From positions 124,001 through 188,000 of the IMG/VR virus record IMGVR_UViG_3300031957_002643: a stretch of DNA of 64,000 nucleotides, one strand, 5' to 3'. Under the pieces are notes generated by a model, which ran no database searches, had not been told where the DNA came from, and was given only the letters and a program-made list of their open reading frames with translations. Positions 1 through 60,514 of this stretch are shown piece by piece. Position 1 is the stretch's first letter; each line of letters starts with the position of its first letter. The translations under genes and the position numbers were made by a program.

Positions 1-741
1 TTGAAATCTGATTTTTCCAGTTACCAAAAATTGAGTAATGGATTCTGTCATCAACTCATCCACAACAGCCAGATTATTGTTTCTCGCACTTCCAAATGTG
101 AAGAAGGCATTATAGAAATTGGCAATTTCAGGAGGTTGTCTAAAAACGCCATCATCGGCAGCAAAGCCGGTTGGGGCGCTCCATAGATTATATCCATACA
201 TCTCGGAAATAATTTTTTCCATCTCTCCAAATACTTTTTTGGTGAAGACGTGCCACACATAATCAAATTCCAACCCTTTTCGCGGGTAGTTAATGATTTC
301 ATGTGCAAACCGATGCATGAAACTCCAAGGTGTCATTTTGCCCTTGATCATAACGATGACGCCCTCATCATTTAAAACCTCAACATCCAAACCACTAAGA
401 ATAAGAACAATAGACCCTTTTCGCTTATTGGTAGCTATGAGTTTCTTTAAAGATTCGGGATGTTCGTCTCGGGTATATTTTGTCAAATCCCGATTGATGA
501 CAAAATAATCAATATCAACTGGTAGTCGGTCTAGGACCTTTTTAACACGTTCCAATAGATCGGAATTCAAAATGATGTCTTTTTGCTCATCATTCCAATC
601 CGATCCAGTTTTGTGTATAATCTTTTTGTGGCCCAGCAGTCCGAAGAAACGTGGTTTCTTGTAGACGAGTTCAAACGTGTCCGAATCCCAATCGTCACCT
701 TTGATCACCTGTCCAGCTTCTATCAAATCTTGAATTTTCAT
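1..741 (-). CDS. Hypothetical protein, runs off the window start (absent from the ORF track); paralog of the C-terminal half of 26666..27958
   Basis: Open frame from ATG at 741 to position 1 with no stop: MKIQDLIEAG...MTPWSFMHRFAHE...FTFGSARNNNL...ITQFLVTG. ATAAATA lies 5 nt upstream. Confidence 0.8.
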   Translation of the reverse strand, partial: MKIQDLIEAGQVIKGDDWDSDTFELVYKKPRFFGLLGHKKIIHKTGSDWNDEQKDIILNSDLLERVKKVLDRLPVDIDYFVINRDLTKYTRDEHPESLKKLIATNKRKGSIVLILSGLDVEVLNDEGVIVMIKGKMTPWSFMHRFAHEIINYPRKGLEFDYVWHVFTKKVFGEMEKIISEMYGYNLWSAPTGFAADDGVFRQPPEIANFYNAFFTFGSARNNNLAVVDELMTESITQFLVTGKIRFQ

Positions 742-2764: not shown

Positions 2765-2914
2765 TCTAAATTAATGACTGCCGATACCAGTCAGTTACTA
2801 CTCGCTGCTTATCAGCATGACCGCAACCAAGGTGCTGCTCGGGTCCAAGGAACGAATTCCTCTTGATCTTTAACGACCATGGGACATATGCATGGTCAGG
2901 GATATTTATATGAC

Positions 2915-2944
2915 AAAGCCCCAAGGCTTTCGCCAAGGGGCTTT
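2915..2944. terminator. Hairpin terminator downstream of the tmRNA
   Basis: AAAGCCCC...GGGGCTTT stem with an internal hairpin, flanked by A/T runs. Confidence 0.7.
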
Positions 2945-3237
2945 TTCTGTTTCGAGGGTTGTCAGACCCCAAGTGGCTTACGCAGCGATGCGAGCCTCAA
3001 CGGCAAAATCATTATCATTTGCAGTTATTTAAGTTGTGCCTATAACGGGCCACACCCGGCAATCTCAACTTCGCTAATACACACCCATCGATCCTATTTC
3101 GCCCCCATCAGCAGCACATACTGTCGCCATGTTCGCTACGCCGGTCATGACCAAACCTTAAAGTATGTGCTGTTGGTGGAGGCGTCGGGTACTGCCCCCG
3201 AGTCTGGTCTGCTGTTCGCTCCGCATCATCAATTACA
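2945..3237 (-). ncRNA. ssrA: Permuted two-piece tmRNA (alphaproteobacterial type), tag ANDNDFAVEARIAA
   Basis: Acceptor piece ending GACTCGGGGGCAGTACCCGACGCCTCCACCA (CCA at 3174) comes first, then an intervening 11-bp hairpin, then the coding piece starting GGGGGCGAAATAGGATCGA (3106). Tag frame 3022..2978. TTGACA-17-TATAAG promoter at 3272..3244. Confidence 0.95.
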
Positions 3238-3268
3238 AATATACTTATAAGGGTTACCGATTCAAATG

Positions 3269-3555
3269 TCAACCGGTTTTTTGCTTATTGTCAGAATTTC
3301 TTCCAATATGGTATCCATCACAAAATAAGCACTTGTAGTTGCTGTAATAGTAGCCGTACTTTTTCTGCATTTTTTGTGCAGCCTTAGTGGCAGATTTCTT
3401 GCTTCCATAGGCAATCTTTGGCTGACCATTCGCATTTTCATGAGAGCGCCTACTACGAAGGCCTCGCATGTGACCTTTGCGCAGATTTCTCAAAAAGCGA
3501 GTTAAGGGGCCTTGGTCCAAAACAACCAGCCAGAGGTTTCTAAGTTTAATCATGT
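3269..3555 (-). CDS. Small basic hypothetical protein with C-x2-C..H motif (start approximate)
   Basis: C-terminal part of track ORF 3269..3742, YKCLFCDGYHIG. Confidence 0.55.
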
Positions 3556-14558: not shown

Positions 14559-14634
14559 TGGCAGGGGCATCAGGACTCGAACCCGAAGTTTCTGTTTTGG
14601 AGACAGACGTGTTAGCCATTAACACTATACCCCT
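14559..14634 (-). tRNA. trnW: tRNA-Trp(CCA)
   Basis: TCTGT-CTCCAAA-ACAGA, G73, CCA. Confidence 0.95.
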
Positions 14635-15098
14635 ACATTTTTACCACAATATGTGGCCGTTTGTGAATGACAATTAGGACATAATAAGCGCAAGTTGTCA
14701 ACCCTATGATCATTACTTATACCATTTATGTGATCAATTTGCAACGACAGGGGCTTTTCATTCCATGTTTCTCCTTGGCCGCATTCATAACATTGGTATT
14801 TTAGTATGTTTTCATTTACTAGACGATTTTTTAAACTTCTCATATTTTTATATGTTGAGTTTTCAACTAACACTTCTTCTAGTGGGAGTCTTCGTTTTTC
14901 TATCCCTCGATTCCGTAAATACACAATGGACGCGAAATGAGAAGTATCAAGACGCAAATCTAATATCCTCTCTTTGATCCGTCTATGATTATATGATCCG
15001 CCTGTGCTTTTTTTAAAATGTCGTAGTACATCCGAAACACATTGACTATCTTTTACTGCTAATTTAAAATCTTCATCACTTTCGTAATTCATAATCAC
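14625..15098 (-). CDS. HNH homing endonuclease
   Basis: CYECG, LQIDHING..ND, LCPNCHSQT; stop codon lies inside tRNA-Trp. Confidence 0.9.
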   Translation of the reverse strand: MIMNYESDEDFKLAVKDSQCVSDVLRHFKKSTGGSYNHRRIKERILDLRLDTSHFASIVYLRNRGIEKRRLPLEEVLVENSTYKNMRSLKNRLVNENILKYQCYECGQGETWNEKPLSLQIDHINGISNDHRVDNLRLLCPNCHSQTATYCGKNVGV

Positions 15099-21011: not shown

Positions 21012-21958
21012 TGAAGAAGCCCTCAGACACAAGGTCCAAGGGCTTCTAAAGCTTGGCCACATGCTATCCTTACAGACCCGCATGTACTCTTTTGAAAGCC
21101 TGAGATTAAGGCTTCTAACGATGACCTTTGGACCGCACCGAAGCCCTTGCGAGGCTTGTTAATCCGTTATCCACAAATTGGTGTCACCACTCAACTTGTA
21201 TTCACCAGTGCTGCCTTTTTTGAGGTGTGGCCTTTCACCTGTCACGCTGTGCTATTCGTCAGACTTTGATCCACCTGCCTTGCGAGCAGTTCGAGGTTGC
21301 AGCCCCTATGAACTCCGTTCTAACAATCATCTTTGGCTTGCGGCCTCCGATGAACCCTGTTCCTTACTAGGCAGGGTATTAAGCACTTTTCACACAACGC
21401 CGAACCAGTCTTTGCGTTTTATCTTCTGAGAAGGGGTTGAACCTTCGACAGATCGCTTTGAATGCGATTGCTCTACCACTGAGCTATCAGTAACCTACCT
21501 CGATGTGCTGGTCCTGTTGCTTCGCTACCTGTTGGTAACAAAATACAACACACCGACTGTCGTTCACCCGCTAAGGCTAATAAACCAAACTTCTGGATTA
21601 GTCATCACCACCAAAGTGATGCCGTCACCCATTGTTTTGCGAACCGCCCTTACCCGCTAAGGCTCGAACCTGTCCACTATCCGTTAACCATCACATTCAA
21701 CCGTTTAGCATGTGAATCTGCGGGTGCTAACCGCACAGGTCTCGGTGTTACCCAAACCTTCATCACCGGTCTTACTGCTTAGCGCATCCATGGCTGAATA
21801 CGCGCCCTAATAGGCTTGGCTCGGACTTGTATAGCTGAACCATTGCTGGCGCGAGTATGTAGGAATTCCCGCTTTGGGCTGGTTACCCAGCTTATTCTTA
21901 ATGGACGCTATACCGCCCAAACTCTTATTTCATTTCCCAGTGGCCGTAACCACATCGT
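21012..21958 (-). ncRNA. Large structured ncRNA, GOLLD-like, with an embedded tRNA-like domain
   Basis: ~950 nt without a credible ORF; TTTACA-17-TATATA promoter at 21994..21966; many minus-strand hairpins with GTAA/GCAA loops; 3' hairpin at about 21016..21046. Confidence 0.65.
21422..21493 (-). tRNA. tRNA-like element with UCA (opal-reading) anticodon; imperfect acceptor stem, no CCA
   Basis: TA-GCTC-AGTGGTA-GAGC, ATCGC-ATTCAAA-GCGAT, GAAGG-TTCAACC-CCTTC. Confidence 0.75.
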
Positions 21959-26165: not shown

Positions 26166-26260
26166 TGGCTCCCATCTGAGGTATCGAACCTCACCCGCGT
26201 CTCATCAACGCAGACCTCCGGTTAACAGCCGGGTACCTTCACCGTGCCAGTCCGATGGGA
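26166..26260 (-). tRNA. trnN: tRNA-Asn(GTT) with long variable arm
   Basis: CCCGG-CTGTTAA-CCGGA, ~24-nt variable region, 7-bp acceptor, GCCA. Confidence 0.8.
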
Positions 26261-57998: not shown

Positions 57999-58119
57999 AC
58001 ACATAACTCCATGTAACTCATATTACACGGAAAATATGAATGTGTCAATACTGTTGACAATCAAATTAAAACCTGATATACAGTGTTCATTGTCAAGTTC
58101 ATACATGGAAAGGAACTTT

Positions 58120-58656
58120 ATGAGCAACAATGTTTTTGGTCTCGTCCCCGAACGCAAGACCTACGTCGCAATCGATGGCGTCAATCTTCATGCGGCACTC
58201 CGCAATGAGGAAGGGACTATCGATTTCAAGAAAATGCGGGAAGACTGTGAAATCGAATGTGACTATATCAACTTCGGTTACTTTACCGGCGTTGCTGATG
58301 ATGAAGATGGTCACAATCCGATCAAGCCTCTTATCGACTTCCTGTCGTTCAATGGCTTCGAACTGCACACCAAGCCGCTGAACAAGTTCACCACCAATGA
58401 TGGTCGTACTATCGTCAAGGGCAATACCGATGTCGATCTCGCTGTCAAGGTCATGGAAATGGCATGGAACGGTGCCTGTGAACATCTCGTGCTGTTTTCT
58501 GGAAACAACGAGTTTTCTCCCCTCGTCAAAGCGCTGCGTTCTCGTGGTATTCGAGTCAGTATCGTTTCCGGTGAAGGCGTTGTGGGCGAATCTCTGCGTG
58601 CTTCTGCGAACGAATTCATCAACGTGAAAGAAGTTCTCGCGGACTTCAAACGTTAA
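58120..58656 (+). CDS. NYN/LabA (DUF88) PIN-like domain protein with altered acidic motif
   Basis: IDGVNL, KGNTDVDLA, LFSGNNEF, RSRGIRV. Confidence 0.85.
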   Translation: MSNNVFGLVPERKTYVAIDGVNLHAALRNEEGTIDFKKMREDCEIECDYINFGYFTGVADDEDGHNPIKPLIDFLSFNGFELHTKPLNKFTTNDGRTIVKGNTDVDLAVKVMEMAWNGACEHLVLFSGNNEFSPLVKALRSRGIRVSIVSGEGVVGESLRASANEFINVKEVLADFKR

Positions 58657-58713: not shown

Positions 58714-58980
58714 TTATACCAATTCGAGACTCAAAATCACATAGTCCCGATCAAGAACCGCACTGGAAAATGCACACGGTGTTGCTCGACCAGTGATGTA
58801 TGTAATCTTTACGCGACATTCCTCACCAGAATATTCTCCTTTGAATGGATCGTACTCCTGAAGGATTAGGACATCTCCTAGCTGAAAGTTTCGATCATCT
58901 TTTCTAAGGTCATGCTTCTTGTCACCAGCCTTGATGGCTTGAAAGAATGAAGTCCAAGATTTTACTGTATGTTCTGTCAT
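58714..58980 (-). CDS. DUF3850 / ASCH-superfamily protein
   Basis: FQAIKAGDKKHDLRKDDRNFQLGDVLILQEY. Confidence 0.85.
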   Translation of the reverse strand: MTEHTVKSWTSFFQAIKAGDKKHDLRKDDRNFQLGDVLILQEYDPFKGEYSGEECRVKITYITGRATPCAFSSAVLDRDYVILSLELV

Positions 58981-59658
58981 TTTTATTTCTCCTAATTTTA
59001 GACATAATTGTACCTCGCTATATCCCGGCCCCAATAATATTTCTCTGATCAACAGATTCTAAAAATATTATTCAGGTTAATAGCGACTTAACCGGGTGTC
59101 ATGGTTTTACGATAAGCGTAGAAATCCCACAGAATGCAGTTTCGGTTGCCAGCCGTCCCGGCCCATGATGTATGGTCACCATGGAAACCCTACTCTTTCC
59201 AGAATAGAAAGAATTGCCGTTCAAAGTTCTGTGTTCTGATCAGGCCTATGACCATCTCTTGCCTGATCCGACCGAGGTTCAATATTCTTTTGAATATCTA
59301 TCCAAATCGCCTACAATATCAACCTTGTTTTCTCCGCAGAGAGGGTGTTACAAGGAACACGTTGGTCGCTCATCAAAAGGGACAGAGACCAATCCGACCT
59401 GAATCGATTCTAGGACATTTCGTAAGTGATTCATTTATCAGTGGAATATTAAATACAGTTGGAGCGCCACCATGAAAAAACCTATAGACCGTAAGATTCA
59501 AAAGCTTATATCCCGATATCAAGACAGAGCAGCCATCGCATTAGGAGATGTTACTATAGAAGAAATCAATAGTAAGAATAATCACACACGTGGGTTTCGG
59601 GTGAATTGGGATCGTGTTTGACATATGGAGATTTTACCCATATAAGTAGATGTACGTT

Positions 59659-59952
59659 GTGGGTGTGGCGAAATGGTAGACGCGACAGACTTATAGTGAT
59701 TGAGTGCTCTCTTAGAAATAGGAGATGTAGAACTGCTCAAATTCGGGGAAACCTGTAAAATGGCAATCCCGAGCCAAGCTTTCCTGAAAAGGATTGAAGG
59801 TGTAGAGACTAGACGGGCAGCATCTAAGTTGGGAAACCAATATGATGAAGGGATAGTCCAGACTACAAACCGTAATGGGCAGCGAAAGCTGTAGTTAGTA
59901 CGAAAATCTGTTTCCTTATGGAGTGGGGGTTCGAGTCCCCCCACCCACACCA
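59659..59952 (+). tRNA. trnL: tRNA-Leu(TAA), interrupted (exons 59659..59692 and 59903..59952)
   Basis: Spliced anticodon arm ACAGA-CTTAAAA-TCTGT; acceptor GTGGGTG/CACCCAC; ACCA. Confidence 0.95.
59693..59902 (+). mobile_element. Group I intron (IC3/trnL-type), 210 nt, no ORF
   Basis: 5' exon ends in U and intron ends in G; core elements AATTCGGGGAAACC, AATCCCGAGC, GTAGAGACTAGA, GAAGGGATAGTCC. Confidence 0.93.
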
Positions 59953-60007
59953 ATTGCAAAATACGAACGCTATATTTTCTAATCAACTATAAGTATACCT
60001 AAAATGG

Positions 60008-60514
60008 GTGTACAATATGGAATTAGAAAATATATTTAAAAGACGTGGTTATACTAAGCAAGAATTTATTACTGCTGTTGAAACTTCATTTAGTAAAAGA
60101 CAGGTCTTACATAAATTAAATCTTGTAGAAGCTGGTGGGAATTATAAAGTATTTGATCGTGCTGTGAAAGAGCTTGGGTTGGATACTTCACATTTTAAAG
60201 GCCAAGGTTATCTTTCAGGCAAAACTCATGATTGGTCCAAAAAGATTCCTATACAAGACATTCTGATTGAAAATTCAACGTATACCTCTTCATTCAATCT
60301 TAAAAATAGGCTATTATCAGAAGGACTTTTAATAGAACAATGTTCCAAATGCGGTATCAGTGATGAATGGCAGGGAGAACATTTATCATTGCATTTGGAA
60401 CACAAGAATGGTATAAACAATGATCACAGGATAGAAAATTTGACACTTCTCTGTCCTAATTGCCATTCACAAACCAAAAGCTACTGTGGTAGGAACAAAG
60501 GCAAATACAAATGA
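60008..60514 (+). CDS. HNH homing endonuclease, paralog of 14625..15098
   Basis: CSKCG, LHLEHKNGINNDHRIENLTLLCPNCHSQT. Confidence 0.9.
   Translation: MYNMELENIFKRRGYTKQEFITAVETSFSKRQVLHKLNLVEAGGNYKVFDRAVKELGLDTSHFKGQGYLSGKTHDWSKKIPIQDILIENSTYTSSFNLKNRLLSEGLLIEQCSKCGISDEWQGEHLSLHLEHKNGINNDHRIENLTLLCPNCHSQTKSYCGRNKGKYK

What the first reader, a model, noticed from the sequence alone, without database searches (positions are those of the whole stretch)
59659..60514. ORF-less group I intron in phage tRNA-Leu(UAA), followed by a free-standing HNH gene
Seen: a 210-nt intron inserted after the first anticodon base, with the HNH start 55 nt past the CCA. Established: this is the insertion position of the cyanobacterial/plastid trnL(UAA) intron, and collaborative homing between ORF-less introns and adjacent endonucleases is known in phages. 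Inference: the HNH cuts intron-less alleles near the anticodon.
Basis: partly seen in the sequence, partly recalled or inferred. Interest (0 to 1): 0.6.

Follow-up and report, generated by a model that had tools for sequence, protein, structure and literature searches.

The report
Phage tRNA-Leu intron with neighbouring HNH nuclease
A giant marine phage carries a leucine tRNA gene split by a small self-splicing RNA intron, with a DNA-cutting enzyme gene right behind it; comparison with hundreds of other phages suggests the two selfish elements travel as a team, a partnership so far described only for phage protein genes.

Summary
Window 59659-59952 is a tRNA-Leu(UAA) gene split between nucleotides 34 and 35 by a 210-nt ORF-less group I intron (59693-59902). 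An intact 165-aa HNH gene (60017-60514) follows it. The intron is a genuine IC3 ribozyme: 96% of cells pair in the P1-P9 and P7-pseudoknot structure across 30 phage homologues, and 46 of 75 pairs show compensatory changes.

It is not of the cyanobacterial lineage. It sits between a large phage clade and proteobacterial tRNA-Leu introns.

The HNH belongs to a large phage family that lives almost only in tRNA gene arrays. Relatives lie inside this same intron, in the P1 or P6 loop and on either strand. Others stand free beside tRNA-Leu(UAA).

In IMG/VR, 9 of 36 ORF-less-intron tRNA(UAA) genes have this HNH within 200 nt, against 0 of 76 uninterrupted canonical ones. The pairing arose at least five times.

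This fits collaborative homing, with the intron shielding the phage's own allele. Cleavage and splicing remain untested, and no RNA data exist.

I found no report of group I introns in phage tRNA genes. I rate it a new member of a known kind, of moderate to high interest.

The parts
59659..59692 (+). tRNA-Leu(UAA) 5' exon: acceptor strand, 3-bp D stem, 5' strand of the anticodon stem, C32 U33 U34
   Evidence: ARAGORN -i cloverleaf. Exon helices covary across 30 homologues.
59693..59902 (+). 210-nt ORF-less group I (IC3) intron ending in omega-G at 59902
   Evidence: RF00028 at 50.8 bits. Structure supported by covariation.
59689..59705 (+). P1: exon 59689-59692 (ACUU) pairs with the internal guide 59702-59705 (GAGU), with a U.G wobble at the splice site (59692.59702)
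   Evidence: C-G, U-A and U.G pairs are kept in 29 of 30 sequences.
59708..59725 (+). P2 hairpin (59708-59714 with 59719-59725) with a GAAA loop
   Evidence: All 7 pairs show changes on both sides.
59733..59858 (+). Catalytic core. P3 59733-59738/59815-59820. P4 59742-59748/59767-59773. P5 59752-59753/59762-59763. P6 59774-59775/59799-59800, with P6a 59779-59785/59790-59796. P7 pseudoknot 59807-59811/59854-59858. P8 59822-59824/59844-59846 and 59829-59832/59837-59840.
   Evidence: P3 pairs in 100% of cells, with 4 covarying pairs. One P7 pair switches between A-U (22 sequences) and U-A (8).; core motif GGTGTAGAGACTAGACGG.
59862..59899 (+). P9 (59862-59866 with 59894-59899, one bulged U) enclosing hairpin P9a (59880-59883/59888-59891, GAAA loop)
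   Evidence: RNAalifold consensus with covariation. All 4 P9a pairs covary.
59903..59952 (+). tRNA-Leu(UAA) 3' exon: A35 A36, 3' strand of the anticodon stem, variable arm, T arm, acceptor strand, A73, CCA
60017..60514 (+). Free-standing HNH endonuclease gene, 165 aa (alternative GTG start at 60008). Its stop overlaps the start of the next ORF (60511).
   Evidence: Pfam HNH and phrog_10822. All family-invariant residues are present. AlphaFold2 pLDDT 92.8.
60341..60475 (+). HNH/zinc module, residues 109-153: C109, C112, H129, N141, C146, C149, H150
   Evidence: Pfam match to residues 109-153. Invariant columns of alignment A2.
14625..15092 (-). Paralogous HNH gene (42% identity). Its last codons overlap the 5' end of tRNA-Trp(CCA), 14559-14634 (-).
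   Evidence: tblastn; sequence and ORF list.

Best explanation
The locus holds two selfish elements on one phage tRNA gene. The 210-nt IC3 ribozyme most likely splices itself out of the pre-tRNA. Exogenous G would attack after U34, and omega-G at 59902 would then be used for exon ligation, giving a normal type-II tRNA-Leu(UAA). The HNH gene 64 nt downstream encodes a site-specific DNA endonuclease of a phage family specialised on tRNA genes. In mixed infections it most likely nicks or cuts the uninterrupted, canonical tRNA-Leu(UAA) allele of a related phage, in or near the anticodon arm (GACTT/AAAATC). Recombinational repair from this genome would then copy the HNH gene and, by co-conversion over less than 400 bp, the intron. 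The intron splits the site in the phage's own DNA and so protects it. This is collaborative (trans) homing. What is shown: the anatomy, the conserved ribozyme structure, the HNH catalytic motif, the family's tRNA association, intron-encoded relatives, and the statistical intron-HNH association. What is inferred: splicing activity, endonuclease activity, position of the cut, and immunity through the intron.
For: 1. Intron reality. RF00028 scores above its gathering threshold. ARAGORN -i gives a 34/35 insertion. Across 30 phage homologues 96.4% of cells pair, against 34-42% in the slid controls. 46 of 75 pairs show compensatory change, including the P7 pseudoknot. The U.G wobble at the splice site and omega-G are conserved.
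2. The HNH looks intact. All invariant residues are present and the fold is confident.
3. The family is tied to tRNA genes. Nearly all of the best 80 IMG/VR loci lie in tRNA arrays, and tRNA identity clusters on the HNH tree (45 changes against 62.4 in shuffles, 0 of 200 as low).
4. Homologues are encoded inside the same tRNA-Leu(UAA) intron. They sit in P6 on the sense strand (L002, 42.7% identity), in P6 on the antisense strand (L049, L073, L078) and in the P1 loop (L029, L057, L058). Two bacterial MAGs show the same.
5. Association. The HNH lies within 200 nt of 9 of 36 ORF-less-intron tRNA(UAA) genes and of 0 of 76 canonical uninterrupted ones (p 1.7e-5). Within tRNA arrays the figures are 5 of 19 against 0 of 46 (p 0.0014).
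6. The window's exact layout recurs in L113, L138, L140, L145, L160, L175 and L199. On the HNH tree the 'beside an intron' state needs 9 changes, at least 5 of them forced by well-supported branches.
7. Uninterrupted tRNA(UAA) genes beside the HNH are depleted in the canonical anticodon arm: 9 of 28 against 7 of 8, p 0.012. The window HNH's two nearest relatives (L007, L008) sit beside non-canonical arms.
Against: There is no biochemical or RNA evidence. Only the source seawater DNA runs hold the sequence, and they show no intron-less or HNH-less variants. No near-isogenic genome was found to show a homing-type presence/absence polymorphism. Nine uninterrupted tRNA(UAA) genes with the canonical GACTTAAAATC sit right beside family members, so some enzymes tolerate that sequence or cut elsewhere. 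Related HNH intron endonucleases such as I-HmuI are known, from my own recall and not checked here, to nick intron-plus DNA too. The HNH tree is short (160 columns) with few strongly supported branches. The Rfam score is only just above threshold.
Confidence: 0.55

Rival explanations
1. Two independent hitch-hikers. The HNH is a free-standing homing endonuclease whose target lies in or near tRNA-Leu(UAA) but is not split by the intron, for example the 3' half of the tRNA or the HNH-less junction. The intron is a separate passenger. The two co-occur because both favour the same conserved gene and are co-converted.
For: The window HNH's closest relatives (L007, L008; 56-59% identity) and about 25 others stand beside uninterrupted tRNA(UAA) genes, 9 of them with the canonical anticodon arm. 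About 75% of ORF-less-intron genes have no HNH nearby. Free-standing endonucleases in phage tRNA regions are known: SegB (PMC2330249) and HNHs in mycobacteriophage tRNA clusters (PMC6409571).
Against: This reading does not explain why 0 of 76 canonical uninterrupted alleles carry the HNH while 25% of interrupted ones do. It also does not explain why the same family is repeatedly found inside this very intron.
Confidence: 0.27
2. A domesticated or non-homing nuclease. The HNH serves the phage in some other way, for example by nicking to stimulate recombination or amplification of the tRNA array, by degrading host DNA at the host's own tRNA-Leu gene, or in DNA packaging. Its position next to the intron is incidental.
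For: SegB was recently reported to amplify anti-defence tRNA loci (PMC13096335, abstract). The genome keeps two paralogues, each beside a tRNA gene. There is no terminator between the tRNA and the HNH, and the HNH stop overlaps the next ORF's start, which suggests ordinary operon expression.
Against: The family's distribution is patchy. Its position and strand relative to the tRNA are variable, and it is repeatedly captured in intron loops. These are hallmarks of selfish homing genes rather than conserved phage functions. It does not lie near terminase or portal genes.
Confidence: 0.13
3. A decaying locus. The intron no longer splices and the tRNA is a pseudogene, or the HNH is inactive.
For: The Rfam score is barely above threshold. 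P5 is only 2 bp and P6a has two U.U mismatches in the window copy. No expression data exist.
Against: Every core helix, the U.G wobble, omega-G and all exon helices are intact and match the family consensus. The short P5 and the U.U pairs are shared by many homologues. It is the only UAA-anticodon tRNA among the genome's 45 tRNAs. The HNH keeps all invariant residues.
Confidence: 0.05

Closest known systems
Bacterial tRNA-Leu(UAA) IC3 group I intron ('Leu.3Ug' class: cyanobacteria, plastids and other bacteria; Williams 2020, bioRxiv 10.1101/2020.01.27.920355; Azoarcus and Anabaena ribozymes cited in PMC3984707)
   Same: Same insertion site (CUU/...g/AAAA). Same compact IC3 architecture without P5abc. 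A U.G wobble in P1, omega-G, and GAAA tetraloops. The core motif GGTGTAGAGACTAGACGG is shared with many proteobacterial and acidobacterial tRNA introns.
   Different: It resides in a 335-kb phage genome. It falls outside the cyanobacterial clade, which has the core GGTGCAGAGACTCGACGG and 100% support. Its best identity is only 77%, to a Rhodobacter intron. It is accompanied by an HNH gene, which only 2 of 120 bacterial loci have, in both cases inside the intron.
Collaborative (trans) homing: T-even phage mobE with the nrdB intron (PMC2790892), and the pathway reviewed in PMC3984707, Fig. 5b. The Bonocora and Shub model, and the cyanophage psbA intron with F-CphI, are from my own recall.
   Same: An ORF-less group I intron in a conserved phage gene, with a free-standing endonuclease gene immediately adjacent. 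The proposed logic is the same: the nuclease cuts the intron-less allele and the intron gives immunity and is co-converted.
   Different: The host gene is a tRNA, not a protein gene. The intron is IC3 rather than IA2. The nuclease belongs to a different, uncharacterised HNH family (phrog_10822). Here the same family is also seen inside the intron at two different loops and on both strands. Cleavage is untested.
Free-standing homing endonucleases in phage tRNA regions: T4 SegB (GIY-YIG; PMC2330249, PMC13096335) and HNH genes in mycobacteriophage tRNA clusters (PMC6409571). The T5 F-Tfl nickases are from my own recall.
   Same: An endonuclease gene embedded among phage tRNA genes, with proposed preferential inheritance of the tRNA region.
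   Different: SegB has a different fold. No intron is involved in those systems. Here subclades of the family track particular tRNA identities.
I-Ssp6803I, the endonuclease encoded in the Synechocystis tRNA-fMet intron and specific for the anticodon region (Bonocora and Shub 2001, cited as B105 in PMC3984707)
   Same: A precedent for a homing endonuclease that recognises the DNA of a tRNA anticodon stem-loop at an intron insertion site.
   Different: It is a PD-(D/E)XK enzyme (from my own recall), it is intron-encoded, it is bacterial, and the tRNA differs.

Membership tests
Group I intron, subgroup IC3 (tRNA introns) | Match to the Rfam RF00028 covariance model at or above the gathering score | tested here: met
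   50.8 bits against 50, covering the full model 1-253.
Group I intron, subgroup IC3 (tRNA introns) | Conserved helices P1-P9 with the P3/P7 pseudoknot, supported by covariation; compact, without P5abc | tested here: met
   96.4% of cells pair and 46 of 75 pairs are compensatory. One P7 pair switches A-U/U-A (22/8). P5 is 2 bp.
Group I intron, subgroup IC3 (tRNA introns) | U at position -1 forming a U.G wobble in P1, and G at the omega position | tested here: met
   U34.G44 is kept in 29 of 30 sequences. The last intron base is an invariant G.
Group I intron, subgroup IC3 (tRNA introns) | Self-splicing with guanosine and Mg2+ | not testable with these tools
   No RNA run holds the locus.
Cyanobacterial/plastid trnL(UAA) intron lineage | Insertion between U34 and A35 of tRNA-Leu(UAA) | tested here: met
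   ARAGORN: 'Intron Insertion Position(34-35)'.
Cyanobacterial/plastid trnL(UAA) intron lineage | Phylogenetic and sequence affiliation with cyanobacterial introns | tested here: not met
   Cyanobacteria form a separate clade (SH-aLRT 100) with the core GGTGCAGAGACTCGACGG. The window groups with phage and proteobacterial introns.
HNH endonuclease (PF01844; phrog_10822) | beta-beta-alpha-metal motif with catalytic His, Asn and His, plus a four-Cys zinc site | tested here: met
   Pfam 25.4 bits against 21.4; phrog_10822 at 4e-45. C109, C112, H129, N141, C146, C149 and H150 are conserved. The only structural hits are weak ones to HNH nucleases.
Homing endonuclease gene (free-standing) | Patchy distribution next to a conserved target gene, with variable position and strand | tested here: met
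Homing endonuclease gene (free-standing) | Site-specific cleavage of the endonuclease-lacking allele and unidirectional gene conversion | not testable with these tools
   Needs protein and crosses. No polymorphic population variant was seen in the source runs.
Collaborative (trans) homing pair | An ORF-less intron with an endonuclease gene immediately outside the interrupted gene | tested here: met
   The HNH starts 64 nt after the CCA, and no intron fragments flank it.
Collaborative (trans) homing pair | Intron and endonuclease are found together more often than expected | tested here: met
   9 of 36 against 0 of 76 (p 1.7e-5). In tRNA arrays, 5 of 19 against 0 of 46 (p 0.0014). At least 5 independent origins.
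Collaborative (trans) homing pair | The nuclease cuts the intron-less allele at or near the insertion site, and the intron-plus allele is immune | not testable with these tools
   Only indirect hints: intron-encoded relatives, and depletion of the canonical anticodon arm beside the HNH.

The most novel reading that the evidence does not exclude
Phage tRNA genes may be a large, overlooked habitat of IC3 introns: 88 of the first 120 IMG/VR core-motif hits lie in tRNA genes. One HNH family aimed at tRNA anticodon-arm DNA may drive their spread and retention. Under this reading the intron is the only way to keep a canonical tRNA-Leu(UAA) sequence next to the nuclease. The HNH ORF has repeatedly moved between free-standing, P1-loop and P6-loop positions, on either strand, which would give a natural series for how mobile group I introns are born. 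A further step: the many tRNA-Leu(UAA) introns in proteobacterial and other host chromosomes may persist partly as protection against such phage nucleases.
Probability: 0.3. Interest if true: 0.8.

Novelty: new member of a known kind. Interest (0 to 1): 0.62.

Why it matters
Group I introns in phages are described for protein-coding genes, and tRNA introns for bacteria and plastids (PMC3984707; bioRxiv 10.1101/2020.01.27.920355). I found no report of self-splicing introns in phage tRNA genes. Standard tRNA finders miss them, so tRNA-Leu(UAA) is unannotated here, in Atu_ph07 and in the 595-kb and 735-kb 'huge phages'. tRNA counts and codon-usage inferences for large phages are therefore biased. 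The locus, with its relatives, also gives a testable case of collaborative homing on an RNA gene. It offers a comparative series (free-standing, beside an intron, inside P1, inside P6, antisense) that bears directly on the long-standing question of how endonuclease genes and ribozymes become composite mobile introns. A small HNH with a tRNA-gene target could also be a useful site-specific nickase or nuclease.

Tried and rejected
1. Default ARAGORN does not see the gene. Intron mode does.
2. ARAGORN with long introns allowed produced many false 'introns' by joining halves of neighbouring tRNAs, for example Stop(tta) i2212 and Pro(cgg) i1106. I kept only cases confirmed by HMMs of the two intron halves.
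3. My first association count (8 of 33) undercounted, because ARAGORN run on whole loci lost some genes. It was redone on oriented, trimmed stretches and restricted to tRNA arrays.
4. My first P9 pairing for the window (204-207 with 234-237) was not supported by the family: helix 14 paired in only 69.9% of cells. I replaced it with the RNAalifold P9.
5. The search for a near-isogenic genome failed. The flanking 380-aa protein has no IMG/VR relatives, and the related HNH loci share no synteny with this genome.
6. Sequencing runs: only the two probable source seawater DNA runs hold the locus. There is no RNA, and no joints or variants were seen.
7. A PDB sequence search gave nothing, and Foldseek gave only weak HNH matches.
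8. There is no terminator between the tRNA and the HNH, and the promoter-like sites are uninformative.
9. A cyanobacterial origin was rejected on phylogeny.
The exons were assessed in place with ARAGORN's intron mode and in the precursor alignment.
11. The large protein searches were not used, because PHROGs, Pfam and the locus scans settled the family.

Full report
THE SOURCE. The window is bases 124001-188000 of a 335,552-bp IMG/VR virus record with direct terminal repeats, rated 100% complete. The genome is 42% G+C. It carries 45 tRNA genes and a tmRNA. Only seawater metagenome runs hold the sequence.

THE OBSERVATION. ARAGORN in intron mode, run on the unmodified sequence, calls tRNA-Leu(taa) at 59659..59952 with a 210-nt intron between nucleotides 34 and 35. 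Default ARAGORN misses the gene.
- The exons fold into a normal type-II tRNA: a 7-bp acceptor stem, a 3-bp D stem, a 5-bp anticodon stem, a variable arm, a GGGGG/CCCCC T stem, A73 and an encoded CCA.
- Rfam's group I model matches 59691-59875 at 50.8 bits against a gathering score of 50. It is the only such match in the genome.
It matches Pfam HNH and phrog_10822 at 4e-45.

THE INTRON IS A CONSERVED RIBOZYME. blastn against phage records found homologous intron-bearing tRNA-Leu(UAA) genes in three places:
- LR756501, a 735-kb phage, with a 205-nt intron;
- LR756511, a 595-kb phage, with a 700-nt intron;
- Agrobacterium phage Atu_ph07, with a 278-nt intron.
None is annotated. In Atu_ph07 a 'hypothetical protein' CDS overlies the gene.

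Of these, 88 lie inside tRNA genes and 61 inside tRNA(taa).

I aligned 30 precursors (A1). RNAalifold recovered the tRNA arms and P1, P2, P3, P4, P5, P8 and P9, with 43 of 68 pairs compensatory. I then wrote out a structure that adds P6 and the P7 pseudoknot and counted pairs on it:
- 96.4% of cells pair, against 34-42% when the partners are slid by 1-3 columns.
- 46 of 75 pairs change on both sides.
- No shuffle of 500 reached the observed values.
- One P7 pair switches between A-U (22 sequences) and U-A (8).
- The C-G, U-A and U.G pairs of P1, with the wobble at the splice site, hold in 29 of 30 sequences.
- The terminal G is invariant.
Window coordinates of each helix are listed under 'parts'.

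LINEAGE. A scan of one genome per prokaryote species, using a motif that also admits the cyanobacterial variant, again reached 120 loci. About half are tRNA-Leu(taa) introns in Alphaproteobacteria and other Pseudomonadota, Acidobacteriota, Bacteroidota, Chloroflexota and others. Cyanobacteria carry GGTGCAGAGACTCGACGG instead.

On a tree of 142 introns the cyanobacterial sequences form their own clade (SH-aLRT 100). The window lies at the base of a supported group of 110 rows (95). That group splits into a phage clade (42 phage rows plus one MAG row; 99) and a mainly proteobacterial and acidobacterial clade. The window's best identity is 77%, to a Rhodobacter intron.

The insertion site is therefore the classical one ('Leu.3Ug' in Williams 2020), but the lineage is not cyanobacterial.

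THE HNH FAMILY. The protein has more than 583 relatives in IMG/VR. In the best 80 loci it almost always lies inside tRNA arrays, within tens of bases of a tRNA gene.
- On the protein tree the identity of the neighbouring tRNA is clustered (45 changes against 62.4 for shuffled labels, 0 of 200 as low). One half of the tree holds 23 of the 27 members beside tRNA-Leu(taa) and all the intron-encoded members.
- The genome has a second copy (42% identity). Its stop codon lies inside the 5' end of tRNA-Trp.
- A 43-sequence alignment shows an N-terminal helical module and a C-terminal zinc-HNH module. All invariant residues are present in the window protein.
- The AlphaFold2 model is confident (pLDDT 92.8). 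It finds only weak HNH matches in the PDB.

HNH AND INTRON TOGETHER. HMMs of the two intron halves show the same HNH family in several positions relative to the intron:
- in the P6 loop on the sense strand (L002 = LR756511, 42.7% identity; its stop codon lies in the J6/7 core);
- in the P6 loop on the antisense strand (L049, L073, L078);
- in the P1 loop (L029, L057, L058; also L080 in tRNA-Phe);
- free-standing beside ORF-less-intron genes.
The window's exact layout, with the HNH 19-46 nt downstream on the same strand, recurs in L113, L138, L140, L145, L160, L175 and L199. Those HNHs are 33-54% identical to the window's.

After dereplication, 12 of 48 ORF-less-intron tRNA(taa) genes have the HNH within 200 nt. 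With at least 700 nt of flank the figure is 9 of 36. For comparison I scanned for uninterrupted genes with the same D-arm and anticodon-arm signature. None of 76 has the HNH (p 1.7e-5). Restricting both sets to tRNA arrays gives 5 of 19 against 0 of 46 (p 0.0014).

On an enlarged HNH tree the 'beside an intron-bearing tRNA' state needs 9 changes, at least 5 of them forced by starred branches. The window's protein stays with L007, L008 and L019, which stand beside uninterrupted genes. The partnership has therefore formed repeatedly.

WHERE DOES IT CUT? This is unknown.

Points in favour of the anticodon arm:
- Intron-encoded relatives sit exactly at 34/35.
- The HNH is absent beside canonical uninterrupted alleles.
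- Uninterrupted tRNA(taa) genes that do sit beside the HNH carry the canonical GACTTAAAATC in 9 of 28 cases, against 7 of 8 for genes more than 500 nt from any HNH (p 0.012). This comparison is small and confounded by tRNA lineage.
- The tRNAs beside L007 and L008 have altered anticodon arms.

Points against a simple picture:
- Those nine canonical neighbours exist.
- Some HNH intron enzymes are known to nick intron-plus DNA as well (my own recall).

LITERATURE. Reviews place phage group I introns in protein genes and describe collaborative homing (PMC3984707, PMC2790892). Williams (bioRxiv 10.1101/2020.01.27.920355) mapped 5,292 tRNA introns in bacterial genomes only. The huge-phage paper does not contain the word 'intron'. 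Searches for phage tRNA introns returned nothing relevant. Endonucleases in phage tRNA regions are known: SegB (PMC2330249) and HNHs in mycobacteriophage tRNA clusters (PMC6409571). Absence from this library does not prove the finding is unpublished.

VERDICT. The intron is a bona fide IC3 ribozyme of a phage/proteobacterial lineage. The HNH is an intact member of a tRNA-gene-associated homing family. Collaborative homing with intron-mediated immunity is the best-supported mechanism (about 0.55). The main rival is independent hitch-hiking on the same gene (about 0.27).

Noticed in passing
window 21097-21556 (-): A GOLLD RNA (RF02032, 177 bits against a gathering score of 150) with an embedded tRNA of anticodon TCA (21422-21493), which ARAGORN calls 'SeC'. 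It may be a UGA suppressor.
   Followed up: no
window 2887-3276 (-): A phage-encoded two-piece (permuted) alpha-proteobacterial-type tmRNA with tag peptide ANDNDFAVEARIAA. It hints at an alphaproteobacterial host.
   Followed up: no
window 14625-15092 (-) and 14559-14634 (-): A second HNH of the same family (42% identity). Its stop codon lies within the first 10 nt of tRNA-Trp(CCA). Relatives in other phages (L028, L051, L053) sit 2-9 nt upstream of tRNA-Trp in the same way.
   Followed up: partly
G000:C1:254867-254942 (outside the window): A tRNA with anticodon CTA (amber-suppressor-like; ARAGORN calls it 'Pyl'). Together with the TCA tRNA it may point to stop-codon read-through or recoding. 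I did not test the genetic code.
   Followed up: no
L004 (Atu_ph07, MF403008.1: 110404-115506), locus 2256-2617: The cultured jumbo phage Atu_ph07 has an unannotated tRNA-Leu(UAA) with a 278-nt group I intron. A 'hypothetical protein' CDS (AUZ94936.1) is annotated across its 3' part. The 735-kb and 595-kb huge phages LR756501 and LR756511 carry the same gene.
   Followed up: partly
L003 (Pelagibacter phage HTVC120P) 2464-2654; L005 (Chosvirus KM23C739) 2472-2657: The major capsid gene is annotated as two adjacent 'capsid protein' CDSs. The gap between them matches the core of this intron type, so the capsid gene is probably interrupted by a related group I intron.
   Followed up: no
L049 3010-3465, L073 290-769, L078 2983-3441: HNH ORFs lie inside the P6 loop of tRNA-Leu(UAA) introns but on the strand opposite to the tRNA. 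This is an unusual antisense arrangement for an intron-borne endonuclease gene.
   Followed up: partly
L096, L117, L134, L160 (intron-bearing); L007, L012, L016, L034, L077, L079 (uninterrupted): Many phage tRNAs with anticodon UAA are 72-78 nt long, with a short variable loop. They have class-I shape, not the type-II shape of tRNA-Leu, so their amino-acid identity is uncertain.
   Followed up: no
L069 2971-3456, L029 1892-2617, L062 4918-5379, L067 2836-3549: Some HNH family ORFs contain 1-3 in-frame stop codons. They may be pseudogenes or belong to phages with reassigned stop codons.
   Followed up: no
L325-L444 (genome contigs): tRNA-Leu(UAA) introns with the non-cyanobacterial core are common in Alphaproteobacteria, Betaproteobacteria, Acidobacteriota, Bacteroidota, Chloroflexota and Vulcanimicrobiota. 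Related introns sit in Met, Arg, Phe, His, Thr, Ile, Lys, Ser, Tyr, Gln and Asn tRNA genes.
   Followed up: partly
window 58099-58653 (+) and 58714-59052 (-): A NYN-domain (RNase-like) protein gene and a DUF3850/ASCH 'RNA-binding protein' gene lie just upstream of the tRNA-Leu gene. Any link to tRNA processing is unexplored.
   Followed up: no
window 26166-26260 (-): A 95-nt 'tRNA-Asn(GTT)' sits next to a normal 76-nt tRNA-Asn(GTT). Its length is odd for this isotype.
   Followed up: no
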